Shown piece by piece: positions 43,101 to 63,873 of a stretch of 64,000 nucleotides of DNA (its first letter is position 1; each line of letters opens with the position of its first letter). The position numbers and the translations under genes were made by a program. Origin of the DNA: Asterias rubens (lineage: Eukaryota); the NCBI RefSeq assembly GCF_902459465.1, contig NC_047062.1, forward strand, positions 17,670,001 through 17,734,000. The letters are read 5' to 3'. The notes under the pieces are model-generated. The model had not been told where the DNA came from. It was given only the letters and a program-made list of their open reading frames with translations, and made no database searches.

Positions 43101-46100
43101 CACTGCCACTTTTCTACTCATATTGAAAGTCAAATGTTGCATTTTGACATAAAATGTGCAACTTGCGAAACCCGACATTCAATTAAATTCTGATACATAA
43201 TTATTTTCATGCCTCCATGAAAAATAAAGGAGAAATCAAAGTAAAAAATTCGTTAAAATTAAATTAGCAGTGCGGTCTGTAGTTTGGCAAATACTTAAAG
43301 GCAGTGGACACTATTGGTACTTACTCAAAACAATTATTGGCATAAAACATTTCTTGGTGACGAGTAATGGGGAGAGGTTGATGGTATAAAACATTGTGAG
43401 AAACGGCTCCCTCTGAAGTGCCATAGTTTTTGAGAAAGAAGTAGTTTTCCACGAATTTGATTTAGAGACCCCAGATTTAGAACTTGAGGTCTCGAAATCA
43501 ACCATCTAAACACACACAACTTCGTGTGACAAAGGTTATTTTTCTTTCATTATTATCTCGCAACTTCTACAACCGATTGAGCTCAAATGTTCACAGATTT
43601 GTTATTTTATGCATATGTTGAAATACACCAAGTGAGAAGACTGGTCTTTGACAATTACCAATAGTGTTCAGTGTCTTTAAAATTCCCTTATCAGTCAGTG
43701 CAAACTTTCAAAATAGAAACACAAGATATGGTCTCTTCTGTATTGAGAGTTTTGTGCAGATACATGGCTATTCCATAGAGCCTTACCCTATGCATATAGA
43801 GCATAACACAAAGCTGAATCTGTTAATCAGACTCTTCCTATGACCAGGATAGGTATGGCTAGACCGCAGAGGCAGACAACACATTTCTTAAAGACACTGG
43901 ACACTGTTGGTAAATGTCAAAGACCAGTATTCTCTCTTGGTGTATCTCAACATCACATAGACCCCTTTACAGATAGGCCGCAAGTGGTGATTATGATGCA
44001 TTTTGGGAGAGTTGCGAGTAAGCTCTACATGTTTTAAGCGTGACCAACATCCCAAAACATCGCATCCTATTCGAGAATCATTGTTTTTTCCTATTTGTAA
44101 AGGGGTCTATAGTGCATTAAATAACAAACCTGTGAAAATTTGAGCTCGATTGGTCGTCCTGGTTGCGAGATAATTATGAAAGAAAAAACACCCTTGTCAC
44201 ACGAAGTTGTGTGCTTTAAGACGGTTGATTTCGAGACCTCAAATTCTAAATCTGAAGTCTCGAAATCAAATTCATGGAAAAGTACTTCTTTCTCGAAAAC
44301 TATGTCACTGTAGAGGGAGCCGTTTCTCACAATGTTTTATACCATCAACCTCTCCCCATTGGTTGGGAAACCAAGTAAGGTTTTATGCTAATAATTATTT
44401 TGAGTAATTACCATTATTCATTAAGTGTCCACTGCCTTTTAAAAGTTAAATTCAATTTAATGCCCCCCTAAAAACTAATAAATATTTATTATAAAATTAT
44501 ATGGACAAAAACAAACATTTTCAATTCCCTTTCACCATTATACAAAATGGACAGGGACATAAGCAGTGATAAGACATCAGTTTTTAAGCACAGTTTGAGT
44601 TTAAAATAAAGGATAAGTTCTGATAACTTTCTGACTATAATTTATAAAGGAAAATTATCGTAGCGTCATACGTTATTGACCCTCATATGTTTTCGGTCCC
44701 CAACTTTGCACCGGTGACAGAAGCTATGCAGTTTACTCACGGTCTTTATTTTCATCAGGCTTAATCATGCTGAGAATAAAGTTTCCTGTCGTTGGCTATG
44801 CTCAAACATTTATAAAATGATTGATTTTTGGTACTAATCACTAGTGCATTATTATGCCAACATTCAAATGAGTCAAAGAAACATCATCCAACCTCGAAAG
44901 TTCAAAACAAAATTACTATCTGCTAGATTGAGTTTCATTCTGCTTTAGTCACTAGATGGATCACATGAGGTGGTTTCTATTTGGGATTCTATGGTGTGCA
45001 AATGTGGGGAAAACATTAAAATATTTTGAGTGAAAATGACAAAAACATTTTTTTATTTTATTTACTGCATACTGTGATAAATTCCGATGCGTAATAAATG
45101 TTAGGTCTACATTGAAGAGAAAATATCATAGATTGGTTTCTTATCTCCTGAAACCAAATATTACTGGTCTGAAATGGGGGAAAACCGATTGTTATGTAGT
45201 GTGTGTGCTTCAAGAGGGGGTGGGGTGTTTTACTTTCATGCCTTATGATATCTCTGGATTCTAATATAGTTGCCAGAATGCCTTGGGACAAAAAGTAAGT
45301 AGTAATAGACCTTATGCATTGACGGCATCCAGCCGCCATCTTTGAGGTCAAACGGTGACGAAACAATCGAAACGCACATAGGTTGGCCAATGAACAACCT
45401 CCCTTTGACCTCAATGCGGGGGCGTCGTACTGAAATGACGTCATGTGCATAAGGTCTATTGAACAATATTTTTTATTTATTTTGCACGTCATACTAGCTT
45501 CTGAATATTCAATAAAATACCAACCAATGAAAGGTGTGAAAACATATGACGTTGCTCCAATGTCGTGCATGCATAATGGCGGACTGTCTCTCACAACGTG
45601 AAACCAAAACTTTAAAACCTTCAACATACACACCATGAAGTGTAAGTGTTATTGTTGAAAAATTGGACAGATGATTTAAAAAAAAAAACATTTAGTTTTT
45701 GATTGTGAACAGTTTTCCTGTTATCCTACTGAACACACATGACACCAGGTTACTAATAGTTAATAATATTACTATGGCACCACCACTTTTTCACTCATTT
45801 TTAATTTACAAAAAAAAAGGGATAGGGCCTATGTGAGGGTGAGGTAAATTAGATACTTGATTATTTCATATCGAATGAAAAAGTGGTGGCGCCACACGGA
45901 AACTTTTCCACAAAAAAAAGTGTGAGGCTGTGTTGATGCTGAGCAGTGTTTTTAAGCCAGCGCCATCATCAACACAACACAGTGGTCAAGTGGGTGTCAC
46001 CATGGAGGAATTTATTCCTCCATGGTGTCACACAGTCAATGGCGTGATGGATACCTGATACAGTGAGTAACATACCCGAAAAGATTTCCGAAAAATCCTG

Positions 46101-46167
46101 TCGCCGATTTTAATTTTCTGTCAGCTTCATCCAGTAAAGCCTTCCCTTTTGCCTCGTTTTCTGCCAT
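37117..46167 (-). CDS. NAPA: Alpha-soluble NSF attachment protein (alpha-SNAP), 292 aa
   Basis: Exons (-) 46167-46076, 42740-42661, 42118-42002, 41006-40826, 40196-40049, 38167-38057, 37570-37520, 37215-37117. All GT-AG, phases consistent, 879 nt. Hallmarks: [67 protein letters not shown]-terminal DLR*. Confidence 0.98.
40310..40470 (+). mobile_element. tRNA-derived SINE, family A
   Basis: GGGTTCGAATCCCACCCG followed by the body shared with 34085-34225 and 41130-41400. Confidence 0.7.
41130..41400. mobile_element. Inverted pair of family A SINEs (- copy about 41130-41275, + fragment about 41305-41400)
   Basis: The body CACAGAACTTGGGAAAGTACTGAGTATA occurs on both strands. Confidence 0.65.
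41519..41889. mobile_element. MITE family 2 (TIR AAAGCCATTGGACCCTTT), TTAA-type ends
   Basis: Terminal inverted repeats; interior shared with 3567-3720 (-) and with the left end of 3182. Confidence 0.8.
43295..43680 (+). mobile_element. MITE family 1, full length
   Basis: TTAAAGGCAGTGGACACTATTGG ... CCAATAGTGTTCAGTGTCTTTAA. Confidence 0.9.
43888..44442 (-). mobile_element. MITE family 1 copy interrupted by a nested about 155-bp TIR element (43957-44110)
   Basis: Host colinear with other copies on both sides; insert ends ATAGACCCCTTTACAGATAGG / CCTATTTGTAAAGGGGTCTAT. Confidence 0.85.
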
Positions 46168-46554
46168 CTTTGTTTTGTAAGGAAGACACAACTTCCCAGA
46201 ATTTTTTTCAAATCTGACAAATTACAGTAGAATCAGTAAAAACAGAACGGTAATTGCATCGTTGTTCAATAAATAGTGCACTCGCCAACATCAGTCAGTG
46301 CCTTCGTGACCTTTGACACATGACGTCATTTATCAGAAAGGGCATGACGGGAAGGTAAACAGCGCGCACGTGACGATTACTTTTACGAATTTCTTTACAC
46401 GCGACACGAAGGTTGGCAATACTGCAGAGCGCGAAATTTGACTGTTTTTACTCGTCCAAGATAAAATAATGATGGAATCTACCAGTTCATTGTGTTAAAC
46501 TGTAGAGACACGGGATCGTCGCTGAAAACAGAGGGAAAGGCGTCCGAAGCGAAG
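46168..46554. promoter_or_regulatory. Bidirectional promoter region NAPA / CatSper1
   Basis: Divergent genes. Perfect CRE TGACGTCA at 46321-46328, CACGTGAC E-box at 46367-46374, extra TGACG half-sites. Putative CatSper1 5'UTR exon donor AAG|GTAAAA at 46555 and NAGNAG acceptor at 47072-47077. Confidence 0.6.
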
Positions 46555-47108: not shown

Positions 47109-50100
47109 ATGGATACTCTTCAAGTGCCAGGTACCACTGGAAAGCCGAGCCAAACCCAGGAGGGGTCCTCCGGTGCGATCAGCCCCGATACCCTCTCTTT
47201 CTTTAAGGATAAGGTGAAGAGTCGTCGTGACCAGCTTGCCCGTCATTCGCACCTTCCGCCCCCATCAGCCGCCCAGCTCAAGAAGACGGCCGAAGCAGCT
47301 ACTGCAGCGGCCAATGCATTAGGGTCGGTGCATAACTACAACGATGTAACATCTGACATCTCAGAGGTACCTTTATGGAATTTTAGCCAATGACTCAACA
47401 CCACAAAGGCTGTGGGCACAACAACTTGCGAAGCACAGAAAACTCTCACTTAGCAAAAACAGTTCACCAGCCAAAATATCATACAGTTAGCATTGTTGCA
47501 TGCATCTGGTACTCCACTCATGTCTAATTGTTTACAACGCATACTTTTTCTGCCTAACAACTTTATGGAAATTTGCCCCAACTACCAACTTAAAGTTTGA
47601 TTATGAGGAAGCCTGTATAATAATACATGTATATATATTGTGAATGTTTATCTTGAAGGTCATGGCTCGAGCAAGTTTAATGCAACATGTTTCGTTTTAA
47701 TTGGCAGACATTGTTGTGGGGGTCACTTATGGGGGTCACTTATCATACCACAGAATGCATTGCCATCCCCATCGGTGAAACTTACATCAATAAACAATTT
47801 ATTTTTCCCGAAGTCTCTACAGAGCGCACACGCCTTTGAGGCAGCCGGCCTGAATGACAAGGAGACCCGGGAAAAACTGGCTCTAGAACTCCGGAAGAAA
47901 AAGATCCTGAATACAGCCGGAACATTCCGGCTCCACATGTACGACCTAACAGAGTCCATTGCTTTTAACGGGCTTATCTTGGGGGTGATTCTACTCAATA
48001 CAGGGATCATGTGTGCTCTTACCTACGACACGGTGGCCGTTCGGGCAGGTAATGCTGAAAGAAAGAAGCAAGTTTGAGTTTCTTATTAAAGGAACTGGCT
48101 ACTTTTGGCAATTGCTCATAAAATTGTTAGCAAAAAAACTTACTTGTTAGCGATCATTGGAGAGATAGATGTTGATAGTATAAAACATTGTGAGGAACGG
48201 CTCCCTCTGAAGTAACGTCGTTTTCGAGAAAGAAATTTCTCACTAAAATATTTGAATTTCATTTCGAGACCTCAGAATTTGATTTTAAGGTCTCAAATTT
48301 AAGCATTATGAAAGCGCATAACTTCCCGTGGCAAGGTTTTTTTTCTTCTTCTTCTATAATTATCGCGCAAATTTTCACAGGTTTGTTATTTTGTGAATAA
48401 TGTTGAGATGCACCAAGTGAGACGACTCGTCTATATGACAATTACCAAAGGTGTCCAGTGTCTTGAAATGAATTGAATGACTCATTTTATTTCTTTAAGT
48501 TGTTCTGGTTGTGAAGCCGAGGACTCTCAGAGGGGTCGATGTTTAAATCACTTTACTATTACCTAGACACATGGAGAGAAACACAAGGAAGGGAGTTTAA
48601 GTTGTTAACAGTTGTGATGGGAGGAAAACCCCGAGATTTATTCCAAAGAAAACCCAAGCCATCAGCAGGTAGGGACTGAAAACATAGGGCCCTTGTGGGA
48701 TTCGAGAGGCCTTAGAGGTGGAGAAGGCGTAGCGAGGCAAAATACCACTATACGCCAACCCATTCAAACATTGTATAGGCCTTTGTAAACATTCGTTTGA
48801 ACAATTTTGTTCGTACACTTCTTACACAAAATCCATGAAGTGTAGAGATATGCTTTGCCAAACAACACCGAGTATTTTTTTGGCGATCTATTTCCCTCAG
48901 GATGGCATGCCGTTGTGTTGGACCACGTGTTTCTGGTCATCTATTTCATAGAATGTGTCCTCAAGTTGTACGTGTGGCGATTGGACTATTTCAGAGAGCA
49001 CTGGAATATAATTGGTTAGTATTGTTTGAATCATGAAAAATGTGAAACATGACAAATTAATTGAGCAAGACATTTAGAGATTTCATTGGGTGGTATTAAA
49101 TTAAGCCCCATCGGCCCCATGGTGTAATGGTTAGCACTCGAGACTTTGAATCTCGCGATCCGAGTTCAAATCTCGGTGGGACCTTTGCATTTTGCCAAAT
49201 TAGTTTGTTGCATTCAGCTACTTGTATAATTTTTATCGGCATTTTAAGTAACGAAAATGTTCATTTGAACCTGAAATGATATTAACTCTTAAAAATGTTG
49301 ATAAATAAAATGTTTGTTTTTTTTAAATATAAAAAAATGAGCAAATTATTTTTTGTTTTTCTTGACGTACACGCACGTTCGGGCGTTTAAATTCGCCAAA
49401 GAACTCGCGTTAAGTATCGCCCTTCACTGTTAACTTGGCTGCCCAAGTGGTCAGTTTTCGGATAAGTTTTCGAGGAAAGTCAAAATAAAGCCACAATGTC
49501 ATTATTCTATGGCAGGTCTGAATTTCAAGGGTGTAAAAGAAAGCGGAACAAATCGAATTAAATGCGTAGACTAACGTTATTGTAGGCCCTATATTTTAAT
49601 ATAGGGCCTACAATAACGTTAGTCTACGCATTTAAAACAATTTAAACAATTTAAATTGTTAAAACAATTTAACTTTTTGTTGGATTTTAAGATTTTACAA
49701 TCGTAGTTGTTAACCTCGCCGACTTCAGCATTTCCACTTTGGTTGGTAATGACGTCAACATTCTCAACTTTATTGGCATCTTTAGAGCGATGAGGGCGCT
49801 GAGAGCTCTGCGGGTACTCCGTACAGTTAGGTAAGATTTCTTGAACAACAACAAATCAAACAACTTGTTAACCAAAATAGATGAATTGCACATGACGTCA
49901 TTGACCACCATCTTTGATGTGAAACAAGGGAAAAGTACCCTCTTGGGTAAACGCGCTGCGCTCGACTCTTAGCCAATGATCACAACTCGTCAAATATGGT
50001 GGCCAATGCAGGGGTTCCATTTGCACCTTATTCCTCGTGTTTTTGTTTCCCCCGCCTTTAAGATTTTTAAAGAGTCTACAGGTGATAATGAATACGTGTC

Positions 50101-53100
50101 TCCAATCAGTGCAGTCTATGGGCGCCATAACCATGCTCATCTCACTGTTTCTCTGTATCCTTTTATAATTGTTTTTTTTTAAATTGTTAAAGACGAAAAA
50201 TATTGTGCCGTCTTTGTTTTAAAATGCTACTCCTTCTCTCCACGGTATAGTGATTAAATAAATTGAATTTATATGAATTCTTGTAACATCTACGACTTTA
50301 TTCGTTGGGTATCCTCTTTGTGTTCTTTTATAGATTACTCTTGAGTTTGAATTGAAAATAAATTTAATGTATTATGTTTCATGACAGGATAGCGTTACCG
50401 CGTAACGGTTCTCAGATTGTGTATTCATAGGATTATTCTTTATACGTCGACATTTTTTTCGCTCTGGATTTTTTGCGATATCTCGAAAACGCGACCCCTT
50501 TTGAAAACGAAATTTTCAGATGCTTTGTGTTATTAGAACAATGTTTATTCTTGTTTTTTTTTAAGAGTGAAAAACGCCAATTCCATCAAATTGCACCCCA
50601 AGCATTTATTTTTTATTTTGTTCATGAATTCCATCGGCCCCATGCTTGGTGTAACGGATAGCACTCGTAACTTGAATCTCGTGATCCGAATTCAAATCTC
50701 TGTGGGACCTTCAGTCTCTCAAAATTTATGTCGCAGAAAAAGGCCCCGTATTTTTTTTTTTTTTTTTTGTGGATTGATAATTCCTTGGAATAATTTTTAC
50801 CGCAGGTATTAAAGAGTTAAAAAGACAACATTATGCATAAAATTACAAACTTGTGAAAATTTGAGCTCAATCCGTCGTCGAGTTGCGAGATAATAATGAA
50901 ATAAAAAACACCCTTGTCACACGAAGTTGTGTGCTTTCAGATGCTTGATTTCGAGACCTCGAATTCTAAATCTGAGGTCTCGAAATCAAATTCGTGGAAA
51001 ATTACTTCTTTCTCGACTACGTTACTGCAGAGGGAGCCGTTTCTCACAATGTTTTACTATCAACCTCTCCCCATTATTCGTTACCAAGTAAGGTTTTATG
51101 CTAGCTAATTATTTTGAGTAATTAACAACAGTGTCCACTGCCAATTAATATTTGTCATTAAAATTGCCGCTGAAAATGATACTGAAAGAAAATAAATGCA
51201 GCAATTAGTTCGGCAAAACATAATTTAAAAAAAACTGAAGGTCCCACCGAGATTTGAACTCGGATCGCGAGATTCAAAGTCTCGAGTGCTAACCGTTACA
51301 CCATGGGGCCGATGGAATGGGTGAGTAACTGCACCAAAACTCACAATGCGATATGTCTTACTTGCTTAAAACACAAAACAATTCAAACTGTACTCCTGCT
51401 CGAAAGAAATACACAGAAAGGACCAGAACGCACAAGCGAGGTTATTTTATCAACAACAAACTTTCAGGGTCATTGAGGATCGAGCAGGCCTCTTGACCAC
51501 GACTTCGCTATCACACTTGCACCCCTCTCCATAAGTTGCGCTTACTCAAACAACCGAAGGATTTTACAAGTTCAAAACTGTTTCTTTTTGCTCAAAATAA
51601 AATACAGAAACACTCAAAAGAGCACACATTTGATAATTAATCGGCCCCATGGTGTAACGGTTAGCACTCGAGACTCTGAATCTTGCGATCCGAGTTCAAA
51701 TCTCCGTGGGACCTTCATTTTTTTAAATTTATTTTGCGAAATATAGGGATATTGAGTTTAACAACTCGTATAATTTTTCATCGGAAGTCTTTTTATTATA
51801 TAATCTATTCGACCAGAAGGACACAAAACGTACAAAAACATGTATAACAGCACAACATAATAAAATATGTACAAAATAAAATAAAAGCAAACATAAGAAG
51901 TACACCTATTAATAATATAAACTTACACGGGCACTAACCGAAGACGAACCAAAATGCAAAGAATAAAACAAAAGAAACGGCTATGTGGGGGTCAGGGGCT
52001 GCAAAATTAGAATGAACCACTATTACCCGCAGTATATAAAGCCCCACAAAACTGTTTTGAAATCGTTTTTACTGCAGGTATTGTCCCTTTAATATTGTTT
52101 GAAAACAAGATAAGCGATAACAAAATTTGAAATCTAAAATTAATTTAGGCGCCAGAACAGGACAGGGCAGTAAAAATGGTTTTAAAACATTAACAATATA
52201 TATTATATATCAAGGAGTTAAAGGCAGTGGACACTATTGGTAATTACTCAAAATAATTATTAGCATAAAACCTTACTTGGTAACAAGTAATGAGTAGAGG
52301 TTGATAGTATAAACATTGTGAGAAACGGCTCCCTCTGAGGTGACGTGGTTTTCGAGAAAGAAGTAATTTTACACGAATAATATGATTTCGAGACCTCAAG
52401 TAAGTTTAGAATTTGAGGTCTCGAAATCAAGCATATGAAAGCACACAACTTGGTGTGACACGGGCGTTTTTTCTTCCATAGTTATCTCGCAACTCCGACG
52501 ACCAATCGAGCTCAAATTTTCACAGGTTTGTTATTTTATGCATATGTTGAGAAACACCAAGTGAGAAGACTGGTCTTTGACAATTACCAATAGTGTCCAC
52601 TGTCTTTAGGACAACCTTGACAAATAAATAGTATGCCTGAAGACCTAAAAACAAGAGGACAGTTTAGAATAATGGCAAAGAGTGAATCCACACATCTGAG
52701 ATGAATCTTAGATCCATCCTCTTTGAAACACACTAAGCAGTACAATAAAAGCGACCACGAAGGGATTCGAACCCCCAATCTTCCGATCAGAAGTCAGACG
52801 CCTTATCCATTATAGGCCATGCACGCGGCCGATATAATCATTTTGATGGTGGAACTAAAACAGCGTTGGGACCAGGCCCGCTTCAGGGCCCCTGCAACTT
52901 TAGTTTAAACGTGTCATTGACAAAATATTCTAAACGCGAAGAGAAGATGATGAAGAAATTTCAGTTCTAGATGTGGGAGGAAACCCTCCGAACCTTTACG
53001 TGTTATCTTTTGAACTTGTAATATTTCGGTTTCTGGCCTTCCCACCACCAGCGACCGGACTACAACCAAAGTCATAACCGATTCCTTACAATTACTAACG

Positions 53101-56100
53101 ATTTCTAACAATTACTAACGACTTCCTAACAACCCTAACCACTTCCTAACGATTCCTAACCAATTCCTAACGATTCCTAATGATTCATAATCAATTCTTA
53201 ACAATGTCCAACCAATTCCTAATCAATTCCAAACACCTAACCAATTCCTAATGATTCCTAACCAATTCCTAACCACTCATAATGATTCCTAACAAATTCC
53301 TAACAACTTCATCTTCCCGAAGTTTGCGTAAAAACCACCGATTTGGGGCGTTGTAGGATTTCCAATTACATCTGGCTCTTGGCGACGGGGGTCCGCGATT
53401 CGCCCCTCCCGGCCGAATGCCTGGTCCGATTCGGTCAGAACTTTCGCACACGAGAGAGGACGTACCCATAATGATTCCTAACCAATTCTTAACCACTTCC
53501 TAATGATTCCTAACCAATTCCTAACCGTCCGACCAATTCCTAACAACGTCCGACCAATTCCTAACGATTCCTAACCAATTCCTAACGATTCCTAACCAAT
53601 TCCTAACAAGTGCTTACCAATTCCTAACGACTCTCCTAACCAATTCCTTACGATTCCCAACCTATTCCTTACGAGTGCTAACCAATTCATAGCGATTCCT
53701 AACGATTCCAACGACTCCTAATAACCAATTCCTAACAAGTGCTAACCAATTCCTAACGATTTCTAACACGTCCAACCAATTCCAAACGATTCCTAACCAC
53801 TAACGATTCCTAACCAATTCCTAACAAGTGCTACCAATTCCTTTACGATGCCTAACCAATTCCTAACCAATTCCTAACAAGTGCTACCAATTCCTTTACG
53901 ATGCCTAACCAATTCCTAACCAATTCCTAACAAGTGCTACCAATTCCTTTACGATGCCTAACCAATTCCTAACCAATTCCTAACAAGTGCTACCAATTCC
54001 TTTACGATTCCTTACCAATTCTTAACAAGTGCTATCCAATTCCTAACGATTCCTAAATCGTCCTAACAATTCCCAACCAATTCCAAACGATCCCTAACCA
54101 ATCTCGGAAAACAAACATTTTGTCATCTAAATTGCCGATAAAATGACAAAAGTTTCCGAATGCATTCAGCAATAATTATAGTTTGCCAAAAGATGACTTA
54201 AATGAAGCTCCCATAGAGATTTAAACTCGGATCGCGAGATTATAAATCTCGAGTGCCAACCGTTACACCATGGGCCGATGGAATGAAGGATTCATTCATT
54301 CATTCATTCAGTCGATGCGGAGCATCGGATGATGGCCCTCCAAACACGTTGGTCCTCCATTGCTGTACGTAGCTCTTCCCGACGCAGTCCAGAGTCCCGG
54401 CACAAGGTGTCCACATAGGTGGTTTGCGGTCTACCTCGGGAACAGTGACCTTGAGTAGGGGCCCAAAGCACAAGCTTGCTCGCTGCCAGCTCATCATGTC
54501 TGAGACAATGACCTGCTAGTCTCAGCCTTCTTGCCATAATCTTGGTGCTAACTCTCGGCAGCCCACCGTAGAGCTCCAGGTTTGTGACATGCCTCTCCCA
54601 ATGAATCTGTTTAACAGAGCGAAGCATTCTCGTATAGCAGCCGTCCAGTCTCTTCTCTAGACGACTGGCTAGTGTCCAGGACTCACATCCATAAAGCAGT
54701 ACTGATTCCACAGTGGCAGTAAAGAACTTCACCTTCAGGGACTGGGACATCTGACTTGACCATTTATGTTCTTCATGGAGTTAAGTGCCTTCATGGAGTT
54801 AAATGAAGGATTAATTAATCAAATATCACAAAGCGAAAGTGATGTACCGATTTGCTTGTTTCTGTTCATATTTACCGCTGATGGGGTGAAAAACACAAAC
54901 ATTTCCGAAAGGATCCGCCGATCGAACAAACACAGGTTGGGGGCTCTTGCGCAGGCCTTTTGCACAACAATGCACACTCGTCGCTTATAGGAACGTTATT
55001 AGAATCACCTCATTCATTAAAAAGTTCATAAGATCACACAAAGGCAATAGTTTTTCTTGTATTCCATCGGCCCCATGGTGTAACGGTTAGCACTCGAGAC
55101 TCTGAATCTCGCGATCCGAGTTCAAATCTCGGTGGGACCTTCAGTTTTCAAAATGTATTTTGCAAAATAATCATAAACACTTTGGCCTATATAGGGATAT
55201 TGCAGTTTAACAAATTGTAAACATTTTTAACGGAAATTTTAATGAAGAAGTGTTTTAAAATCATTTTTACCGCAGGCATTGTCCCTTTAATATTATTTTA
55301 AAACAAGATCAGCGAAAAAGAAGGAGGAAAAAAAAGATCGACCGCGAAGGGACTCGAACCCTCAATCTTCCGATTCGAAGTCGGACGCCTTATCCATTAG
55401 GCCACGCGGCCTGCGTAGCATAACTATGTTAAAATGCCGCAAACAACGTAAACGCACAGAGGTCACTAAATTGATAAAATGCGACACATATGACATAAAG
55501 ATTCTTTAATATTTTGTCCAACACTTCAAACTGATTTTCAAAGTCGGCCGACACAGGCCTAGTGCTTACAAAGAACAAGAGTTACTCAATAGGCTCTAAA
55601 TTATTGAGAAAACGCAGAAAGCTACAATATTATATTTGATATTTTAGGTAGTTACTTCATGGAGGTAGCCTCCATGGTTACTTATAGTTAAATATAAAGT
55701 TGTGACCTATATTTTTCTTTCTATGAAACAATAAATTATCGATTATTTGAATTGGTAAAGAAAGGTACAATGTTACCCTTGAACCAAACCGTGAAATATG
55801 ACGATTGAAACAAGAACCTATTGATGTTAAGTTCAATTTCTGTGAGGTGAAAATATACCTCACTGAGAACAAATCTTTAAAACACTAAGGTATAGCATTT
55901 TTTTTAAGGATACGTCATTTTTGTTGCTCACCACTCTAAATACTTTTGGGTTTGAATTGACCCGGATGCGGGTCACGTGGGCCTGACCCATTTCGGGGTC
56001 AGTATGGCCCAAAATCTGAATCAACATGATCTAGAATTGGGCCAAATGACACTGAGAACAAGTCTAAGTAACACTGGTCATAACATTTTTGCAAGGACGT

Positions 56101-59100
56101 CTACTGTTTGGCTAATCTAACCACTCTTAACACTTTCGAGTCTGAGTTGACCCGGATATAGGGGTCACCTGACTCATATCGGAGTCAGTATGGCCCAAAA
56201 TCTGAATCAACATGACCTAGAATTTGGTCAAACTGAAGCAAGGGGTTACAGGAAGGGTTTTACAATCCAACTTTTTTGCGCTCAAAGGATAACACAGAAA
56301 TGTTCGCCATTTTGTCAGCACTTTGAAATGTTCTGCAATGTTACCATTGAACCATAAAACATGACGATTGAAAAAAGAGCCTATTTATTTCAAGTTCGAT
56401 TTCAGTGGTGAGGTGAAAATAGACCTCCACTGGGAACAAGTCTTAGTTACACTAAGGCATAACATTTTTTGCAAGGATACGTCTTGCTTTGCTCACCACT
56501 CTTAAAACTTTGAGTTCACCCTGTGCGGTTCACCTGACCCATTTCTGGGTCAGTATGGCCCAGAATCTGATTCAAAATGACCTATAATTGGGTCAAACTG
56601 AAGCAGTGGTTTACAAGAAGGGTTTTAAAAGTTCAAACTTTTTTGCTCAAAGGATAACACAGAAATGCCCAGAGGCAATACTTTGGCTTATGTTCCATCG
56701 GCCCCATGGTGTAACGGTTAGCACTCGAGACTCTGAATCTCGCGATCCGAGTTCAAATCTCGGTGGGACCTTGAGTTTTTCGAAATTTATTTTGCCAATA
56801 TAATTGTCGAGTTCAACAACTTGTGTGATTTTTTTATCGGAGGCTTTAGTAAAATTGTGTGTGTGTTTTGAAATCAATGAGTAAATGTCAATGATTATGA
56901 GGTTAAAAATTTCATTCTGATTTTTTTTTGAGAATGTTTGAGAGAAATGGAAAGATTCCTCAACTCTTTTTATCGTCAGATATGTTTGCCGTGATTGGCA
57001 GAGGTCTGTATGCCGATGTAGACCCGAAGCGATTTGGTAACCTCGGCTCGGCGATGTTCACACTCTTTCAGCTTCTAACGTTGGACGACTGGTTCTACAT
57101 CTACTCGGATGCCGTCGCCAAAGACCCAGGTCTGTATGAGTGTAAAACGTTCATATCATGGAAACATGATGGCCTTGAATTACAAAGAGGCCATGATACT
57201 TTAGGGGACACGAGGGGACAAAGACATATTTATCAGGCATTCACTTTGTATAGAACCTTTCATATGCGTTTTTAACCATTTTTTGTTCGGGGGGGGGGGG
57301 TGGTATCATGGTTCCAGCGGGCTCCCTCCCCTGAGGTTACGCCATTATCCTGACGCCAATTAAAAGTTCGCGAAGACTTTAGATTTATTTAACGGAAATA
57401 TAATGTTGCATGCCTTTTTTCCGTTTTGCAGGTTACTTTCACATCATCTTCTTTCTGGTACTGTACATTGCACTGGAGTACTTCATATTTCTGAAGTAAG
57501 TATTAACCCATGCACAACTTTATACATTATACATAGGCCTACGCAGTTAAACATATTTTTGGGGCACTGAAATTGCCTTAAAGGGAAGTTAAGCCAGTAA
57601 AATGATTGGGCCTAAACAGTATTGTTCCCACGTTAATGTATATTAAACAAGACGGAACTGCTTTAAATTGTCATACCTTTACGGAGGATGTTTTTTATGT
57701 TTCAAATCAGAGCAAAGAAATTGTAAACGAACTTGTTTTCTTTAATTTTCACTCAACAAATGATTAAATTGACTTTTGCTTAGCTTATTCGTTGCTGTAC
57801 TGGTGGATAACTTTCAGCTGACCCTGGAGGCAGCAGCGGCAAAGGAAGCTGAACGCAAGGAAGCTGTGGTGAATATAACTTCAAATCATGAATGATATTC
57901 AATTATGGTTATAATCCACGTTCAATCAGCTGCAAAATATGCAAACATTTCACTTATCATAATCCTGTATGTATATAGACGACACACAAAAATGAAACCC
58001 CTTAATTTGTTTTCTTTAAATGAGCATGCAAGCACATGGCACGTGGACAAATTCAAACCCAACGTTAAATACCGTTAAATTTGCATTGCCACTGGCTTGG
58101 GGTTAGTTTAGACAGGTACCATAGCATCGTACTCCAAACACAATTAGGATGAGACGAGTCAGGATTCAATTATCAGGAGAGAATTTTACCATGGCTTGGA
58201 CCATAGAGCAATGCTTGGACCATAATATCCGATCTTAACCAATTCGATTAATTCCTTTATAGATATTGGAAGAGGAAGAGCCAGACGACGACCATCCACA
58301 TGTTCAACCTGCTTTAGGTCAGGATATTCGTTCCCCAAAATAATTGATTTTATCTTTTGAAATAAATAACAAATATTCGACTGACTCAAAATTACAATGT
58401 TAGTTCTGAAAGGAAATGCACACAATTTCGAGGGATATTTTGTGTGATTATATACTACCAATGTTCCACTAGATTATTCAACTAGATGCTTAATAAATTG
58501 TTCTTACCACATACTCAAGCCTGATGAGATGTAGAACAAGGCCATTTTAATAACCTTTCCAATTGCATCTCTTTGGAACTTCTTGCCTGGTGCATGCTGT
58601 GACCAATCATGTCAAATTTAAATTAGGAACATTGATTCCTAATTCAGCTTTCCTAAGTTTGTATGTCTCAGTTTTCTCCCAAGTGTGTGCTGCTGATGAC
58701 CTTCTTTGGGGCGATCTTGTCTAAAATATCAACAAATTATAAATAGTGGAAGTCCCGAGTTGTTATAATTATTTTACTCTCTCCTTTTTCGTTTTTACTT
58801 ACAGTCGATACTGTGTCTTCAGAAGACCTCTTCAAAACCAAGAAAAGCTTTGATGATTATTATGCACAGAATGAATACTCAGACATGTAAGGATGTGATA
58901 AGTATACAGCGGACCTCACAAGTCCGTAACAGCGCCCTTACTATAGCTGAGGTCAATGAACAACTATGATTGGTTGGAAGTTGTGCCCAACGCGGACTAT
59001 CATTATCGATGATTGTTAATTACAGACTAAATACTCAGAAACTAGGAAGTTGTAAGTATTACACAGTACGTGGTTACCCAAAGGATGTATTTAAGTAGAG

Positions 59101-60118
59101 CTTAATTTACTGGCATTGCATAGGTTGGACCAGTGATTTATTTGCAGCGATAACGAAAATAATAACGATCACGACGCAAAGAGAACGCATTCTATTGGTT
59201 GAAATGCTCCAATCAAAACACGCCCACGGACGTACATTCAACTAATCGAGGCCTGTGTGACCGGGCCTGTACACCATCTTGGGACCCCAGTCCCAATCAT
59301 GGAGTGGAGTGGAGCCTTGCATGCGAATTGGGTTTTCGCCTCTACACCCAAATGCATAGGTCTCCCTATTTGTGGTTCCCTCCCGCTTCTGAAGCCGACA
59401 TTTGTTAAACATTTTCCTTACATTACACAGGTTGCTTCAGGCCTTTGAGGGTCCATTGGTTTCTTACCAAAATACTTTTCTAACAATTACGATAGTATGG
59501 GAACCAACAAAATAAACTGATTTCCTTTATACCCAAATATCGAATAAATAACTGATTTATTTATGTGATCGATTTTCTGAACAGTGACAGACAGTATTTG
59601 GCACACTGCTTCCGTTTGTTGGCATCATTGGATTATAATGGGAACTTAGCCAGAAACCAGCAAGGGACACTGGATCAAATACTTGAAGTGGTCCAAGAGG
59701 CAAGTTAGATTTTCCTTGACAGTTTTTCTTAGAATGATTTCAGAGAATTTGCATCAAGGGCTAAAACCAGACTTACTAAACAAATCTCATTTCAAGTTGT
59801 TGGCAAATCACATCTTAATGCCACATGCCCAACCTGGAATAAAATTTTTGAAAGGGCAAAGCAATTTTCATTGGGAAATCTTTCAGTCTATGGGGATCAA
59901 GGGTCACCAAGGCCATTAAAGAGCCCACTAGCAGGCCTGTCATTTTCATCTAGGAGAGGGCAAGGTCATTTCCATTCTTCAAAGGGCACTTCCATTGGAG
60001 AATCAAGCCCATGGGCAATTTTTGAAGGCCTGCATATTTATTAATGATCTGACGATACCACAAGATTGAATAAATAATGTATCTTGCTGTTTATTTGCAG
60101 ACGACTGATGATGCTTGA
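47109..60118 (+). CDS. CATSPER1: CatSper1-like sperm cation channel pore-forming subunit, about 465 aa
   Basis: Exons 47109-47366, 47823-48048, 48901-49014, 49692-49830, 50063-50154, 56980-57129, 57432-57495, 57784-57868, 58263-58317, 58805-58886, 59585-59699, 60101-60118; phases consistent. S4 RAMRALRALRVLRTVR, pore LTLDDW (the CatSper1 filter), S6 EYFIFLNLFVAVLVDNFQ, C-terminal helix YLAHCFRLLASLD. Start codon and last exon are less certain. Confidence 0.9.
48086..48467 (+). mobile_element. MITE family 1, diverged copy
   Basis: Colinear with 43295-43680. Confidence 0.8.
48610..48760 (-). mobile_element. tRNA-derived SINE, family B (degenerate)
   Basis: Similar to 33573-33733. Confidence 0.6.
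49113..49184 (+). tRNA. tRNA-Gln (TTG)
   Basis: 72 nt GGCCCCATGGTGTAATGGTTAGCACTCGAGACTTTGAATCTCGCGATCCGAGTTCAAATCTCGGTGGGACCT; intact cloverleaf, T4 downstream. Confidence 0.95.
49558..49635. repeat. Perfect 78-bp palindrome (38-bp arms, 2-nt centre)
   Basis: Checked base by base; begins and ends with TTAA. Confidence 0.97.
50636..50710 (+). pseudogene. tRNA-Gln pseudogene
   Basis: Insertion in the D arm, disrupted anticodon stem, T-arm mismatches. Confidence 0.85.
50840..51145 (-). mobile_element. MITE family 1, partial
   Basis: Reverse complement of the family consensus. Confidence 0.8.
51239..51310 (-). tRNA. tRNA-Gln (TTG)
   Basis: Intact 72-nt gene; poly-T terminator on the - strand. 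Confidence 0.95.
51643..51714 (+). tRNA. tRNA-Gln (CTG), one T-stem mismatch
   Basis: 72 nt; G:U pair in the anticodon stem, C:C mismatch in the T stem; T-run terminator. Confidence 0.75.
52218..52608 (+). mobile_element. MITE family 1, full length
   Basis: TTAAAGGCAGTGGACACTATTGG...CCAATAGTGTCCACTGTCTTTAG. Confidence 0.9.
52752..52830 (-). pseudogene. tRNA-Arg pseudogene (TCG-type body, anticodon reads TCT)
   Basis: Paralog of 55339-55411 with small insertions in the acceptor/D region. Confidence 0.8.
53085..54105. repeat. Minisatellite of about 11-bp CCAATTCCTAA / CGATTCCTAA units with a 53-bp higher-order repeat, interrupted by a unique island (about 53310-53465)
   Basis: Higher-order units start at 53821, 53874, 53927 and 53980. 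Confidence 0.95.
54206..54276 (-). pseudogene. tRNA-Gln pseudogene
   Basis: Degenerate acceptor stem, anticodon loop and T arm; abuts an RTE insertion. Confidence 0.8.
54293..54801 (-). mobile_element. 5'-truncated RTE-clade LINE with (TGAA)n tail and 11-bp TSD
   Basis: Open ORF 54304-54750 (ATVESVLLYGCESW...LDGCYTRMLR...RRLRLAGHCLR...RGRPQTTY...WRAII) is typical of RTE ORF C-termini; AATGAAGGATT at 54282-54292 and 54802-54812. Confidence 0.9.
55069..55140 (+). tRNA. tRNA-Gln (CTG)
   Basis: Intact 72-nt cloverleaf, TTTT terminator. Confidence 0.96.
55339..55411 (-). tRNA. tRNA-Arg (TCG)
   Basis: GGCCGCGTGGCCTAATGGATAAGGCGTCCGACTTCGAATCGGAAGATTGAGGGTTCGAGTCCCTTCGCGGTCG, 73 nt, T-run terminator. 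Confidence 0.96.
55790..56670. repeat. Three degenerate direct repeats of about 200-300 bp
   Basis: GTCAGTATGGCCCA(A/G)AATCTGA and ACCACTCT recur three times; CTCAAAGGATAACACAGAAATG twice. Confidence 0.8.
56700..56771 (+). tRNA. tRNA-Gln (CTG)
   Basis: Identical to 55069-55140; T5 terminator. Confidence 0.96.
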
Positions 60119-61794
60119 CCATTTTATGAATTGAAGACCTGGGAGGGGCATGTCACCACACCCGCTGGATCCAACCCCAAGTATAGATTGTACTTGCAGG
60201 TGTTATCAAAAGTTTACATGGAGGTTGTACAAAAGTTTCCACTGATGAAAGGGAAAGAGGGGCAATTTGGTTCAGTTCACTTCTGAACGCTTTATAACCT
60301 CACCCCAAACCAATTGTTTTCCCAGTTGTTGGAACCAGTTTCTTAAAGCTGCTTAAAAGCAAGAAATGTTTCTGCTAAGCGAAAATAAGCAAGATAAACA
60401 AGCACATATTGTAAATGTGATGTGAAATGCTATTTTGGCTGGTAACCCTATCCTAGTGTGCAAATGTTTTTTGTACTTTTTGTGTTTAAAGCAGCTTTAT
60501 ATAATAAGTCCCTGCTCAGATCCAACATTTTGCAGAATAAACATTTGTTGAATTCGGAATAAGAATACAAATGTTCACCGTTTACCAACTAACAACACAA
60601 AATTTCGAAATACAAAAACAAAGTAATATGATACAATTTTTTTTAATTTGAAGGCAGCTCTTGATGAACAGTTACTTTCTAAACATTTAATAATTAGATT
60701 AAAATTAAATCATTCTTACTTGTTTCCATATGTCTACCAGAACAATGTTAGTGAAACTGTAATGGATTCTAGGCATATATAACCATTTACAAGATTATCA
60801 TAAGTTGTAGCATTGGATTAAAAGTAACTGATACTATTCAAGATAAAAAACTCTTTGCATAAAAGCAAACTTGTAACATCAGCAAACATTGCACATAACA
60901 ATTCCGAACAGTGAAAGTTTTGAACAATTTGTTCACATAACTGTACTTTCAAAGGACTTATGTATTCCAAATAACTTCACTTGTAAATTATTTGAATGAA
61001 AATTCTGTACATTTTTTTATTTGACATCTTTAACTTAATTACACTTGCTCCTTGATTAACATTCAATGATGAAATGAGTTGTATTCATGGAAACTTCACT
61101 GCCTTCTTTTTCACTTACTAGTTGGGCATCACTCTCATCCATGAAGAGACATCACTGGAGAATGGCCAAACACTTTCTTGGACTTATTTGTCATCTTTGT
61201 TTTGAAAGGGAGAAAAAAATGTTAAAGTTAAAGGAGCACATGTTCATATAGTCACTACGAGGTGCTATTGACAGAAGCACATAAGGCTCTCTAGGAGCAT
61301 GTTGTCCCAGCCGGGCCGAAGATTGTAAGCAATAAAATGGCTACTTAAAAAAAAGAGATAAAGAAATTTTTAAAAAGTGCATAATTGGTGCATGTTTGTT
61401 GCTAAAATGTTTCCCTTTAAAAGAGATATTTTTCAATTCGCATGCAGAGTTTATCTGTATAACAATGTCAAGAGCCAAGAAGAGCTTGGAATTTTCACAG
61501 TCAGTTGCCTTGAAACACAATTCTGAGCATTACAACCTTTTGATGTGCATATCCCTCTGATGGGCATGTCATCCTAAACAAGAATTTCTGATTTTATTCC
61601 ATGGGGTAAAAGAAAAAAAATCATAATTAATGCTGGTGTATCTGTCTTCCATGTAGTTATATGGCAACTGAGTTGATGAAATGAGTAAGGAATAAATAGT
61701 AATGAAAGTTGTCCAAGCAAAATCCAAATAATTCAACCATATGAAAATGAATGGATAATGAAACCACTTACCAGAAGCCAAGTTAGTCAACAAA

Positions 61795-62175
61795 ATTCAA
61801 AAGTTAACTTTGCCATGTTAAGATACGCTGTTTGAAGACGAGAACAAAATTAGAGCCCTGTTATTTACATGAACAAACATTTCAGTAAAGCATACCAGTA
61901 CAGCGTCATATGAAAATAATTGGATATCGAAACAACTTACTCAAAAACAAATTAATACCAAATTATACAAAGTTAACTTTGCCATGTTATAATAATATAT
62001 AAGAGAAGACAATAACAAAGTAGATAAGTTTACCCTTTACATTTAAACATTTCAGTAAAGCAACATATGAAAATTATTAGATACAGAACAATTTACTCAA
62101 ACTCTAGTTAATCCACAAAAATACAAAGTTAACTTTGCCCTGTGAGGATAAGCTGTTTGAAGAAAAGAACAAAAG
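61795..62175. repeat. Three degenerate direct repeats of about 160 bp
   Basis: AAAGTTAACTTTGCC recurs at about 61800, 61970 and 62125. Confidence 0.75.
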
Positions 62176-62435
62176 TAGAAACCTGTATAGTTTAATTCAA
62201 GTGTCCAACAAGTATGCAAAAAGAGAAAACACAAATCAGAAACAAATACGAAATCCATCAATAAGTTCATTAGAAACCTGCAAAACATAACAAAGACACA
62301 ATCGGGCATCTGACATAACAAAGTCTAATGGTTGTGTACAATTAACGGCTTCAGAAGTGGCTATGGCCAAATCACTGAAGGACCAACTCTTAAACACTGC
62401 CTCAGCAGCCACTAGCCACTGCCACAGCCACTGAT

Positions 62436-63873
62436 TCAGACATCCTTACCTGCATCATAATCAAACAGTTGTTCCTCCAACTTCCTGATATGACCTTTGC
62501 GGAAGTACATGTAGGATACGACCCCTAGGGCAAGAGTCAAAATGGCAAAGATTCCTAGAGAGACTTGGGTGAATGGTTTCTCAACCACCGCTCCGGGAAG
62601 ACCATAAACCTCCACCGCAAACCTCGTCTGTAGATGGCAAAAGCTGTCATGGTATCAATGAAACAAACAGATAGATGTTTTTTATATTACTTCAAAACAT
62701 GGTTTGGTTCCGAGAATACCCTGTGGAAGATTTTTTTTATCTGTAATCCTATGAGGGATCTTGTAAAGTTTCCACCCCTTCTAAAGTATCCATACCTTTT
62801 AAAGTTTCCAACCATTCTAAAGTTCCAACCATTTTAAAGTTTCCAACCTTTTAAAAGTTTCTAACCCTTCTAAAGTTCCCAACCCTTTCAAAGTTTCAAA
62901 ACCTTTTAGTTTTCAACCCTTTTGACCTTTCTAATCCTTTTAAAGTGTTCCACCCTTTTAAAGTGTTCAACCCTTTTAAAGTGTTCAACCCTTTTAAAGT
63001 TAGAACAATGTCAGCCCCTGCAATATTTTCCTGCTAACTTTTGAAATAAGCTTATGCTTAGGACTAAGCAAATTTGTTCAGCTATAGTTCGCACACAAAT
63101 GTGCTAACTGGTAAGCAGATATATAAAATTAACTACTGGGATCTAGATGATGGCAGTTCAGTAGACTGTGTACGCCTCACAACAAATAGTTTTGGAACCA
63201 CTGTTCCAATACACACAAGACTTGCACATAGTCTGTACTCGAGTCCTAATGTTTGAATACGTGCAATACATGCACAGTCTGTTTCCATGCATTACCTAAA
63301 CTTAGGATCCACAACTGTAGCTGTGAATTGATAGATGCTAGTATTTCTCGTTGTACTCCATTTGATTGAAGACACTCCAGTGTTATTCAGGACCTGGTAG
63401 CTCTGGGTCCGAAGATCGGCAGCATTGGTGCTTACATTCACTGTAAAACAACTCTTATAATTCTGGGGGAAAAAAACATGAACAAAAAGTGGGGGAAATG
63501 TAATGGTTAAATAACAGTACAAGGGATAAATAGGCATGATATTCGGCCTTTCAAAAAGGTTGGAACATTTTATCCAATACAAGAGCTAACTTATATGTAC
63601 ACATGGTGAAGTCCTAATTAATAACAGTTTTTCTAGTTATTCCCAAGGGCAAAACAAAAATACAAATTCAGACTGAAGGAAATAAAATCATGCATGATCA
63701 AATGACCAGAATTTAAGATGTAATATGCAAGAGAAACTGTGACCCATTAGAAACCTAAAGAGCTAAGGGAAGGAAAGCCTTACATGAGGACCCCACAACG
63801 GGGATGATGATGTCATGTTGTGACTCCCATTGATCATTGATGACCAGGTCTGGGCTAAAGATTGACATCCAGC
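62436..63873 (-). CDS. 3' part of a CatSper auxiliary subunit delta/epsilon-like protein (gene continues beyond the window)
   Basis: Exons (-) 63873-63784, 63462-63296, 62643-62436, phases consistent: AGCQSLAQTWSSM...LWGPH-NYKSCF...YQFTATVVDPKF-SFCHLQTRFAVEVYG...TM(VSLGIFAILTLALGVVSYMYF)RKG...*. This matches my recollection of the CATSPERD/E C-terminal pattern (AQTW..M, WGP.NY..CF, DP.YS(F/Y)C.L...F.I..(F/Y)G, then one TM helix). Confidence 0.75.
62760..63000. repeat. About 19-bp degenerate minisatellite (AAAGTTTCCAACCCTTTT-like)
   Basis: Tandem units in the last intron of the delta/epsilon-like gene. Confidence 0.85.

What the first reader, a model, noticed from the sequence alone, without database searches (positions are those of the whole stretch)
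47109..63873. CatSper1 pore gene lies tail-to-tail with a CatSper delta/epsilon-like auxiliary subunit gene
Seen: CatSper1 ends at about 60118 (+) and a single-pass membrane protein gene ends at 62436 (-), about 2.3 kb apart. The second gene's C-terminus fits the CATSPERD/E pattern as I recall it. Established: human CATSPER1, CATSPERD and CATSPERE are on different chromosomes. Inference: two subunits of one channel complex are physically linked here, possibly a relic of ancestral clustering or co-regulation in spermatogenesis. This gene may represent the unduplicated delta/epsilon ancestor, and the 3'UTRs may overlap.
Basis: partly seen in the sequence, partly recalled or inferred. Interest (0 to 1): 0.7.

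Follow-up and report, generated by a model that had tools for sequence, protein, structure and literature searches.

The report
Starfish CatSper1 beside CatSper-epsilon gene
In the starfish Asterias rubens the genes for two parts of the sperm calcium channel CatSper (pore subunit CatSper1 and canopy subunit epsilon) lie tail-to-tail about 1 kb apart, and this pairing is shared by five echinoderm and acorn-worm genomes but not by a fish, a brachiopod, two corals or a fungus.

Summary
On the + strand, 47109-60118 encodes a 12-exon, 465-468 aa CatSper1 orthologue. On the - strand lie the last four coding exons of a roughly 30-exon gene that runs 20.5 kb past the window. That gene is the already annotated A. 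rubens "CATSPER epsilon-like" protein (1001 aa).

Two corrections:
- **Stop codon.** The annotated, RNA-supported splice (62450 to 61194) puts the stop at 61184, so the two coding regions end 1,065 bp apart.
- **Not an unduplicated delta/epsilon ancestor.** The protein matches mouse epsilon at 260 bits and delta at 89 bits, and it groups with epsilon proteins in a tree. A separate delta gene lies on contig 14 and a beta gene on contig 20.

The linkage is not incidental. The same convergent CATSPERE/CatSper1 pair, with coding ends 1-3 kb apart, occurs in Patiria, Acanthaster, Amphiura and the hemichordate Saccoglossus. It is absent from Amia, Lingula, Paramuricea, Orbicella and Allomyces.

RNA-derived contigs cover 60117-62479 almost without a break. 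They are unstranded, so overlap of the 3'UTRs stays open. I found no paper reporting this linkage. The genes are known; the conserved pairing is a modest new observation, and its cause (constraint or neutral retention) is inferred.

The parts
47109..60118 (+). CatSper1 orthologue, coding span. 12 coding exons: 47109-47366, 47814 (or 47823)-48048, 48901-49014, 49692-49830, 50063-50154, 56980-57129, 57432-57495, 57784-57868, 58263-58317, 58805-58886, 59585-59699, 60101-60118. 465-468 aa.
   Evidence: Manual model reads open across all junctions. PDB best hit is mouse CatSper1 for the pore exon (44 bits; CatSper4 28, CatSper3 24), the S2 exon (28 bits) and the S3-S4 exon (weak). Filter motif TLDDW and an S4 with six Arg at every third position. 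Exon-by-exon 80-94% identity to the Ion_trans neighbours in Patiria, Acanthaster and Saccoglossus. Junction 58317/58805 seen in an RNA-derived contig.
50155..56979 (+). 6.8-kb U12-type (GT-AG class) intron inside the S5 coding region of CatSper1
   Evidence: Donor GTATCCTTT and branch-site-like TTCCTCAAC 14 nt before the acceptor. The same donor and branch motifs occur at the same position in Saccoglossus, and the branch motif in Patiria and Acanthaster.
60101..60118 (+). Terminal CatSper1 micro-exon (TTDDA, stop TGA 60116-60118)
   Evidence: Conserved in four other ambulacrarian loci, with synonymous differences. It is preceded by a GC donor at 59700, at the position where Patiria and Saccoglossus have GT.
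60119..61183 (.). 1,065-bp stretch between the two stop codons, holding the 3'UTRs of both convergent genes
   Evidence: RNA-derived contigs cover 60117-61282 (X5) and 60637-61194 joined to 62450 (X3). Poly(A) signals: + strand at 60536; - strand at 60642 and 60686. Strand of the contigs unknown, so overlap is not shown.
61184..61194 (-). Last coding exon of CATSPERE in the annotated and spliced form (completes ...A-DDK, stop TAA 61186-61184). Its 3'UTR runs on to at least 60637.
   Evidence: Pattern search finds a single site. Joint 61194/62450 with minus-strand GT..AG ends in contig X3. P0101 maps there.
62450..62643 (-). CATSPERE exon with the end of the stem domain, the single TM helix and the cytoplasmic tail.
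   Evidence: Pfam CATSPERD-E_C positions 163-204. Joint 62643/63296 in three runs, plus unspliced contigs through 62450. P0101 residues 934-998.
63296..63465 (-). CATSPERE exon, stem (CATSPERD/E C-terminal) domain
   Evidence: Pfam CATSPERD-E_C positions 110-162, collinear with the next exon. Used as the query that recovered 96 family members.
63784..63873 (-). CATSPERE exon (P0101 residues 849-878). About 27 further coding exons lie beyond the window, up to C1:17754524.
   Evidence: Exact mapping of P0101.

Best explanation
Shown: the window holds a convergent (tail-to-tail) pair of genes for two subunits of the sperm Ca2+ channel CatSper. One is the pore-forming CatSper1 orthologue. The other is the orthologue of the single-pass extracellular 'canopy' subunit CATSPER-epsilon. 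The delta/epsilon duplication had already happened, because delta sits on another chromosome. The pair, with coding ends only 1-3 kb apart, goes back at least to the common ancestor of echinoderms and hemichordates. In Saccoglossus and Asterias an alpha-SNAP gene also lies head-to-head with CatSper1. Inferred, about 55-60% likely: the pair has been kept because the two genes share one regulatory or chromatin neighbourhood, with abutting or overlapping 3' ends. That would help both be switched on in male germ cells to build a complex with fixed 1:1 stoichiometry. It is not because the two proteins are direct partners.
For: Identity of epsilon: P0101 maps at 100% to 84524-61184. Pfam scores are CATSPERD-E_C 124 bits, Beta-prop_CATSPERE 56.9 and NTD2 31.8. 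It matches mouse epsilon 7eeb_H at E 3e-76 over residues 78-987, against delta at 1.6e-24, and it lies in the epsilon clade.
Separate delta: a gene on C14 matches Acanthaster delta-like P0001 exon by exon. Beta lies on C20.
CatSper1 identity.
Synteny: CATSPERE(+)/Ion_trans(-) occurs in Patiria, Acanthaster, Amphiura and Saccoglossus. The neighbours are CatSper1 orthologues by exon identity and by the shared terminal micro-exon.
Flanks outside the block differ: a B9-C2 gene in Patiria and Acanthaster, SART-1 in Saccoglossus, and no B9 gene within 17 kb in Asterias. The surroundings were therefore rearranged while the pair stayed.
Both genes give spliced contigs in the same run, X4.
Against: No expression, chromatin or stranded 3'-end data were available, so the reason for retention is inference. 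In mouse the canopy genes are reported to be expressed earlier than the pore genes (PMC13484710). That paper lists pore subunits 1,2,3,4 alongside gamma, epsilon, delta, beta, and I recall that epsilon packs against CatSper2, not CatSper1. The pair is absent in a vertebrate (Amia: ADSS and a Peptidase_C97 gene flank CATSPERE), Lingula, two cnidarians and Allomyces. CatSper therefore works without the linkage. No pore gene was seen within 10-20 kb of delta or beta. Sea urchin, sea cucumber, crinoid and amphioxus could not be examined.
Confidence: 0.6

Rival explanations
1. Neutral leftover. The two genes became neighbours once, by chance, in an ambulacrarian ancestor. They stayed together only because a 1-3 kb gap between convergent genes offers few harmless breakpoints. 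There is no functional coupling.
For: The pair is missing in every non-ambulacrarian genome examined. Delta and beta have no pore-gene neighbour. The unrelated alpha-SNAP gene is conserved next to CatSper1 too, which shows that plain microsynteny persists here.
Against: Adjacency of two of about 8 subunit genes is itself unlikely (about 0.2-0.3% by my estimate). The outer flanks changed while the pair persisted in 5 of 5 genomes spanning more than 500 million years.
Confidence: 0.35
2. The - strand gene is the unduplicated ancestor of CATSPER delta and epsilon.
For: Its propeller also hits the delta-type Pfam model (49.9 bits against 56.9 for the epsilon type). Delta was reported to appear later in evolution than epsilon (PMC5362262).
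Against: A second D/E-family gene with delta architecture exists on C14. Sea star and sea cucumber delta proteins form a separate clade with vertebrate delta. The protein scores 260 bits against epsilon and 89 against delta.
Confidence: 0.02
3. The + strand gene is another CatSper pore paralogue (2, 3 or 4) or another single-repeat cation channel, not CatSper1.
For: Only exon-sized pieces could be searched. The S1 exon gave no PDB hit. The long His-rich N-terminus of mammalian CatSper1 is absent.
Against: CatSper1 is the top solved-structure hit for three separate exons. Short N-termini and total lengths of 456-474 aa are reported for sea urchin and sea cucumber CatSper1 (PMC13674862).
Confidence: 0.03

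Closest known systems
Mouse/human CATSPER-epsilon (CATSPERE, C1orf101; chain H of the CatSpermasome structure 7EEB)
   Same: Full-length collinear similarity (E 3e-76, residues 78-987). Same domain order: NTD1/NTD2, beta-propeller, Ig-like, D/E C-terminal stem, one TM helix, short tail.
   Different: About 26% identity to vertebrate proteins. NTD1 and Ig-like scores are below Pfam cut-offs. The gene lies next to CatSper1, whereas in Amia it is flanked by ADSS and a Peptidase_C97 gene, as I recall for human 1q44. It has an alternative terminal splice that changes the last residues.
Mouse CatSper1 (chain A of 7EEB and 9UBW)
   Same: Single 6-TM repeat, TxDxW filter (TLDDW), arginine-rich S4. Best hit for the pore, S2 and S3-S4 exons.
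   Different: Short N-terminus of about 130 aa that is not His-rich, as reported for other marine invertebrates (PMC13674862). It has an ambulacrarian-specific terminal micro-exon ending in DDA or DDM.
Atlantic herring male-specific region carrying CATSPER3 and CATSPERG copies (PMC7533707)
   Same: Genes for a pore subunit and a canopy subunit of CatSper lie physically close together.
   Different: That is a recent lineage-specific assembly by gene copies on a sex chromosome. Here the single-copy autosomal genes themselves are neighbours, and the arrangement is shared across phyla.
Ancient metazoan microsyntenic pairs of non-paralogous genes (PMC3514665, PMC8851819)
   Same: An adjacent pair of unrelated genes kept over hundreds of millions of years.
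   Different: Those blocks are mostly explained by regulatory elements of a developmental gene lying inside a bystander gene. Here both genes encode parts of one protein complex and are convergent, with a very short gap.

Membership tests
CATSPER-epsilon (CATSPERE) | CATSPERD/E C-terminal stem domain (PF22850) | tested here: met
   124 bits against a cut-off of 27.4 for P0101. The two window exons hit profile positions 110-162 and 163-204 collinearly.
CATSPER-epsilon (CATSPERE) | Epsilon-type beta-propeller (PF22844) | tested here: met
   56.9 bits against a cut-off of 27.1. The delta-type model PF15020 also hits the same stretch at 49.9 bits, so this feature alone discriminates weakly.
CATSPER-epsilon (CATSPERE) | Epsilon-specific N-terminal domains NTD1 and NTD2, which are absent from delta | tested here: inconclusive
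   NTD2 scores 31.8 bits (cut-off 27), so it is met. NTD1 scores 22.9 bits, below its cut-off of 27. The sea star delta protein P0001 has neither.
CATSPER-epsilon (CATSPERE) | Epsilon Ig-like domain (PF22849) | tested here: inconclusive
   23 bits against a cut-off of 28.3, at the expected position 639-739.
CATSPER-epsilon (CATSPERE) | Closer to epsilon than to delta over the full length, and placed in the epsilon clade | tested here: met
   260 bits against 89 bits to the mouse chains. Ambulacrarian epsilon clade has SH-aLRT 91, inside a bilaterian epsilon clade at 81, with a separate delta clade at 84 (quick tree of the C-terminal 330 residues).
CATSPER-epsilon (CATSPERE) | Single C-terminal TM helix and short cytoplasmic tail | tested here: met
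   A hydrophobic stretch of about 21 residues followed by about 25 residues in exon 62450-62643.
CATSPER-epsilon (CATSPERE) | Part of the CatSper complex in sperm | not testable with these tools
   [quoted passage not shown] Nothing is available for Asterias.
CatSper1 pore subunit | One 6-TM voltage-gated-like repeat with a charged S4 and a TxDxW filter | tested here: met
   The model has S1-S6, an S4 with six Arg at every third position, and TLDDW.
CatSper1 pore subunit | Closest to CatSper1 among CatSper1-4 | tested here: met
   Pore exon: 44 bits against 28 (CatSper4) and 24 (CatSper3). S2 exon: only CatSper1 among the CatSpers. S3-S4 exon: CatSper1 on top but weak. This was tested exon-wise only; no full-length tree was made.
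CatSper1 pore subunit | Long histidine-rich N-terminal domain (mammalian hallmark) | tested here: not met
   The N-terminus is about 130 aa with few His. PMC13674862 reports the same short form for sea urchin and sea cucumber CatSper1, so this feature defines the mammalian form rather than the orthologue group.
Conserved microsyntenic gene pair | Same neighbours and same relative orientation in distant lineages while the outer flanks differ | tested here: met
   5 of 5 ambulacrarian genomes (plus this window). Outer flanks differ. Absent in 5 outgroup genomes.
Conserved microsyntenic gene pair | Co-expression or shared regulatory elements | not tested
   The only evidence is spliced contigs of both genes in one run of unknown tissue (X4).

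The most novel reading that the evidence does not exclude
The alpha-SNAP/CatSper1/CATSPER-epsilon block is an ancestral deuterostome (or older) arrangement held together by selection. The convergent genes share a termination zone and overlapping antisense 3'UTRs, or one testis-specific chromatin domain, and this couples the output of a pore subunit and a canopy subunit. Vertebrates, brachiopods and cnidarians would then have lost the arrangement secondarily.
Probability: 0.15. Interest if true: 0.6.

Novelty: new member of a known kind. Interest (0 to 1): 0.45.

Why it matters
CatSper is the most complex ion channel known, and how its many subunits are made in matched amounts is an open question. 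In ambulacrarians a pore gene and a canopy gene have stayed about 1-3 kb apart for more than 500 million years. That offers a natural test of whether genomic proximity helps coordinate assembly of the channel, in animals (sea stars, sea urchins) whose sperm physiology is experimentally accessible. The result also corrects an evolutionary point: delta and epsilon were already separate genes in the echinoderm lineage. If the retention turns out to be neutral, the finding is only a well-documented piece of microsynteny between already annotated genes.

Tried and rejected
- **Last exon against PDB:** only a chance TM hit. The S1 exon gave no hit.
- **PF15020 on the own genome:** found only the C14 gene, not the C1 gene. 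Exon-wise family searches are insensitive. PF15064 (gamma) found nothing at all, so that says nothing about absence.
- **The search for homologous proteins:** three searches (full length, 12-sequence profile, C-terminal region) returned only sea star proteins plus Amia. Sea urchin, sea cucumber, crinoid and amphioxus epsilon proteins could not be obtained, so their synteny is untested.
- **Pore exon against the own genome:** found only itself, so the CatSper2-4 loci were not located.
- **Pore-like exons near delta (C14) and beta (C20):** none within 10-20 kb by tblastn or by a TxDxW motif scan. This is weak evidence, since paralogues are divergent.
- **B9-C2 gene upstream of CATSPERE (as in Patiria and Acanthaster):** not found within 17 kb in Asterias.
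- **Gal-3-O-sulfotransferase gene nested in Patiria CATSPERE:** not present in Asterias.
- **Amphiura locus:** holds no recognisable CatSper1 exon except the terminal micro-exon.
- **3'UTR overlap:** Logan contigs are unstranded and break at an A/T run at 60637-60645, so it cannot be decided.
- **The look-up of sequencing runs:** the first attempt failed because the machine was busy.
Full report
**Where we are.** The window is contig 1, 17,670,001-17,734,000, of a 417.6-Mb assembly. The - strand gene product is identical to a public protein named [quoted passage not shown] (P0101). That protein sits on a contig of 33,825,921 bp, the same length as contig 1. I extended the window by 38 kb from the same genome because the - strand gene runs off its end.

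**The + strand gene.** I assembled twelve coding exons from the open frames and splice signals. They give an uninterrupted 465-468 aa protein; the two lengths come from a pair of acceptors 9 nt apart at 47814 and 47823. The protein has six TM segments, an S4 with six arginines at every third position, and the CatSper-type filter TLDDW.

- Solved-structure searches with single exons put mouse CatSper1 first each time. The pore exon scores 44 bits, against 28 for CatSper4 and 24 for CatSper3. The S2 exon scores 28 bits, and no other CatSper is listed. The S3-S4 exon hit is weak.
- One junction (58317/58805) is seen directly in an RNA-derived contig.
I found the same micro-exon downstream of the orthologous genes of Patiria and Acanthaster (TTDDA*, with synonymous third-position differences), Amphiura (PMDDA*) and Saccoglossus (TIDDM*). 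The end at 60118 is therefore real.
- The intron before that micro-exon has a GC donor in Asterias, at the position where Patiria and Saccoglossus have GT.
- The protein lacks the long His-rich N-terminus of mammalian CatSper1. Sea urchin and sea cucumber CatSper1 are reported as 474 and 456 aa with similarly short N-termini (PMC13674862).

**The - strand gene.** The two exons nearest the 3' end hit Pfam CATSPERD-E_C at profile positions 110-162 and 163-204, which are exactly consecutive. A profile of that exon from both paralogues of this genome recovered 96 relatives. The nearest is the Patiria miniata epsilon-like protein, which matches twenty collinear exons from 82988 down to 62451. The Asterias protein P0101 (1001 aa) then maps at 100% identity onto about 30 exons from 84524 to 61184.

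- Pfam scores for P0101 are CATSPERD-E_C 124 bits, the epsilon-type propeller 56.9, NTD2 31.8, and sub-threshold Ig-like and NTD1.
- P0101 aligns over residues 78-987 with mouse CATSPER-epsilon at E 3e-76 (260 bits), against 89 bits for delta.

So this is the epsilon orthologue, and it is already annotated as such.

**The 3' end of epsilon.** The consensus donor at 62450 joins a single matching acceptor at 61194, giving a stop at 61186-61184. In one search, three runs of unrecorded type yielded contigs that lack introns, so they derive from spliced RNA:

- The joint 62643/63296 appears in three runs.
- The joint 61194/62450 appears in one run.
- Other contigs run unspliced through 62450 (62020-62479 and 62203-62478).

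Both forms therefore exist. The coding ends are 1,065 bp apart in the spliced form and 2,317 bp apart in the retained form.

**Not an unduplicated ancestor.** Family searches of the whole genome find a second D/E gene at C14:5,452,586-5,467,352. It matches the Acanthaster "delta-like" protein P0001 exon by exon, and P0001 has the delta architecture: delta propeller 114 bits, no epsilon N-terminal domains. In a tree of the C-terminal 330 residues, the Asterias C1 protein sits with Patiria, Acanthaster, Amphiura and Saccoglossus epsilon (SH-aLRT 91). That group lies inside a bilaterian epsilon clade (81). Sea star and sea cucumber delta group with vertebrate delta (84). This was a quick search and the support is moderate, but it agrees with the score gap. 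Beta lies on contig 20.

**Is the linkage conserved?** For each epsilon protein I fetched the encoding contig with 10-kb flanks.

| Genome | Neighbour after CATSPERE(+) | Gap between coding ends |
|---|---|---|
| Patiria miniata | Ion_trans(-) | 2.7 kb |
| Acanthaster planci | Ion_trans(-) | 1.8 kb |
| Amphiura filiformis | Ion_trans(-) | 2.5 kb |
| Saccoglossus kowalevskii | Ion_trans(-) | 3.1 kb |

- The neighbours are CatSper1 orthologues. Exon-wise identity to the Asterias gene is 80-94% in the pore and S4-S5 exons for Patiria, Acanthaster and Saccoglossus. All four share the terminal micro-exon, which is the only evidence for Amphiura, whose locus ends inside the gene.
- In Saccoglossus the next gene, head-to-head with CatSper1, is alpha-SNAP. 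The window has the alpha-SNAP first exon at 46036-46191(-) in the same position.
- Outside this block the flanks differ: a B9-C2 gene in two sea stars, SART-1 in Saccoglossus, and no B9 gene within 17 kb in Asterias.
- The pair is absent in Amia, where ADSS and a Peptidase_C97 gene flank CATSPERE, as I recall for human 1q44. It is also absent in Lingula, Paramuricea, Orbicella and Allomyces.

The arrangement is thus at least as old as the ambulacrarian ancestor. Whether it is older cannot be told from these data.

**How it probably works.**
- Shown: two subunits of one channel are encoded by a tightly packed convergent pair of great age.
- Inferred: retention by a shared regulatory or chromatin neighbourhood in male germ cells, possibly with abutting or overlapping 3' ends.
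  - Contigs cover 60117-62479 almost without a gap.
  - One spliced epsilon contig reaches 60637, where it stops at a genomic A-run.
  - A + strand AATAAA lies at 60536.
  - The two transcripts therefore end within about 100 bp of each other or overlap. The contigs carry no strand, so this stays open.
- Against a functional reading:
  - The canopy genes are reported to be expressed earlier than the pore genes in mouse (PMC13484710).
  - That paper lists pore subunits 1,2,3,4 with gamma, epsilon, delta, beta, and I recall that epsilon contacts CatSper2, not CatSper1.
  - Many animals have CatSper without the linkage.
  - Neither delta nor beta has a pore gene nearby.
- Neutral persistence of a short-gap pair is therefore a serious rival, at about 35%.

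**Novelty.** Both genes are already annotated. Six literature searches and five papers read turned up no mention of a CATSPER1-CATSPERE linkage. The nearest case is the herring male-specific region, which holds copies of CATSPER3 and CATSPERG (PMC7533707). I rate this as a new example of a known kind of thing (a conserved microsyntenic pair of functionally related genes), of moderate interest.

Noticed in passing
window 39782-46191 (-), first exon 46036-46191: An alpha-SNAP (NAPA-like) gene lies head-to-head with CatSper1, with about 0.9 kb between the first coding exons. The same head-to-head pair occurs in Saccoglossus (L014: SNAP gene starts 467 bp from the CatSper1 orthologue). This may be a conserved bidirectional promoter.
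   Followed up: partly
window 50155-56979 (+): A U12-type intron (GTATCCTTT donor, TTCCTCAAC branch site) splits the S5 coding region of CatSper1. The donor and branch motifs are conserved in Saccoglossus, and the branch motif in Patiria and Acanthaster.
   Followed up: partly
window 59700 (+): The last CatSper1 intron uses a GC-AG donor (AG|GCAAGT) in Asterias, at the position where Patiria and Saccoglossus have GT.
   Followed up: partly
window 47814 / 47823 (+): Two in-frame acceptors lie 9 nt apart at the start of CatSper1 exon 2. Using one or the other would add or drop three residues (SLQ). No read evidence was available.
   Followed up: no
window 61195-62449 (-): The terminal intron of CATSPERE is either spliced or retained. 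This changes the last residues (DDK or GKDV) and the 3'UTR length.
   Followed up: partly
window 54304-54780 (-): A retroelement fragment with an open frame of about 150 aa (the end of a reverse-transcriptase-type ORF) lies inside the U12-type intron. A 59%-identical copy lies in the same intron of Patiria CatSper1 but in the other orientation relative to the gene, so these are probably independent insertions.
   Followed up: no
window 58496-58694 and 59093-59291; similar frames at about 49100, 51230, 51600, 55030 and 56600: Short interspersed repeats in CatSper1 introns draw extreme contig depth in all runs. They translate to a recurring ...HRPHGVTVSTRDSESRDPSSNLGGT... frame, so they may be a tRNA-derived SINE family.
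   Followed up: no
G000:C14:5452586-5467352 (+) and G000:C20:129199-132367 (+): These are the loci of the CATSPER-delta and CATSPER-beta orthologues of this genome. Neither has a recognisable pore-subunit gene within 10-20 kb.
   Followed up: partly
L012 24908-26086 (-), Patiria miniata: A single-exon Gal-3-O-sulfotransferase gene is nested in an intron of Patiria CATSPERE and is absent from the Asterias locus. From memory, human GAL3ST3 is the neighbour of CATSPER1 at 11q13. This could be a trace of older synteny; I did not test it.
   Followed up: partly
beyond the window: C1:17740716-17741462 and C1:17767767-17768765 (-): A tandem repeat of about 750 bp (unit about 39 nt) lies in a CATSPERE intron. 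A single-exon rhodopsin-like GPCR ORF (333 aa open frame) lies 13 kb upstream of CATSPERE.
   Followed up: no
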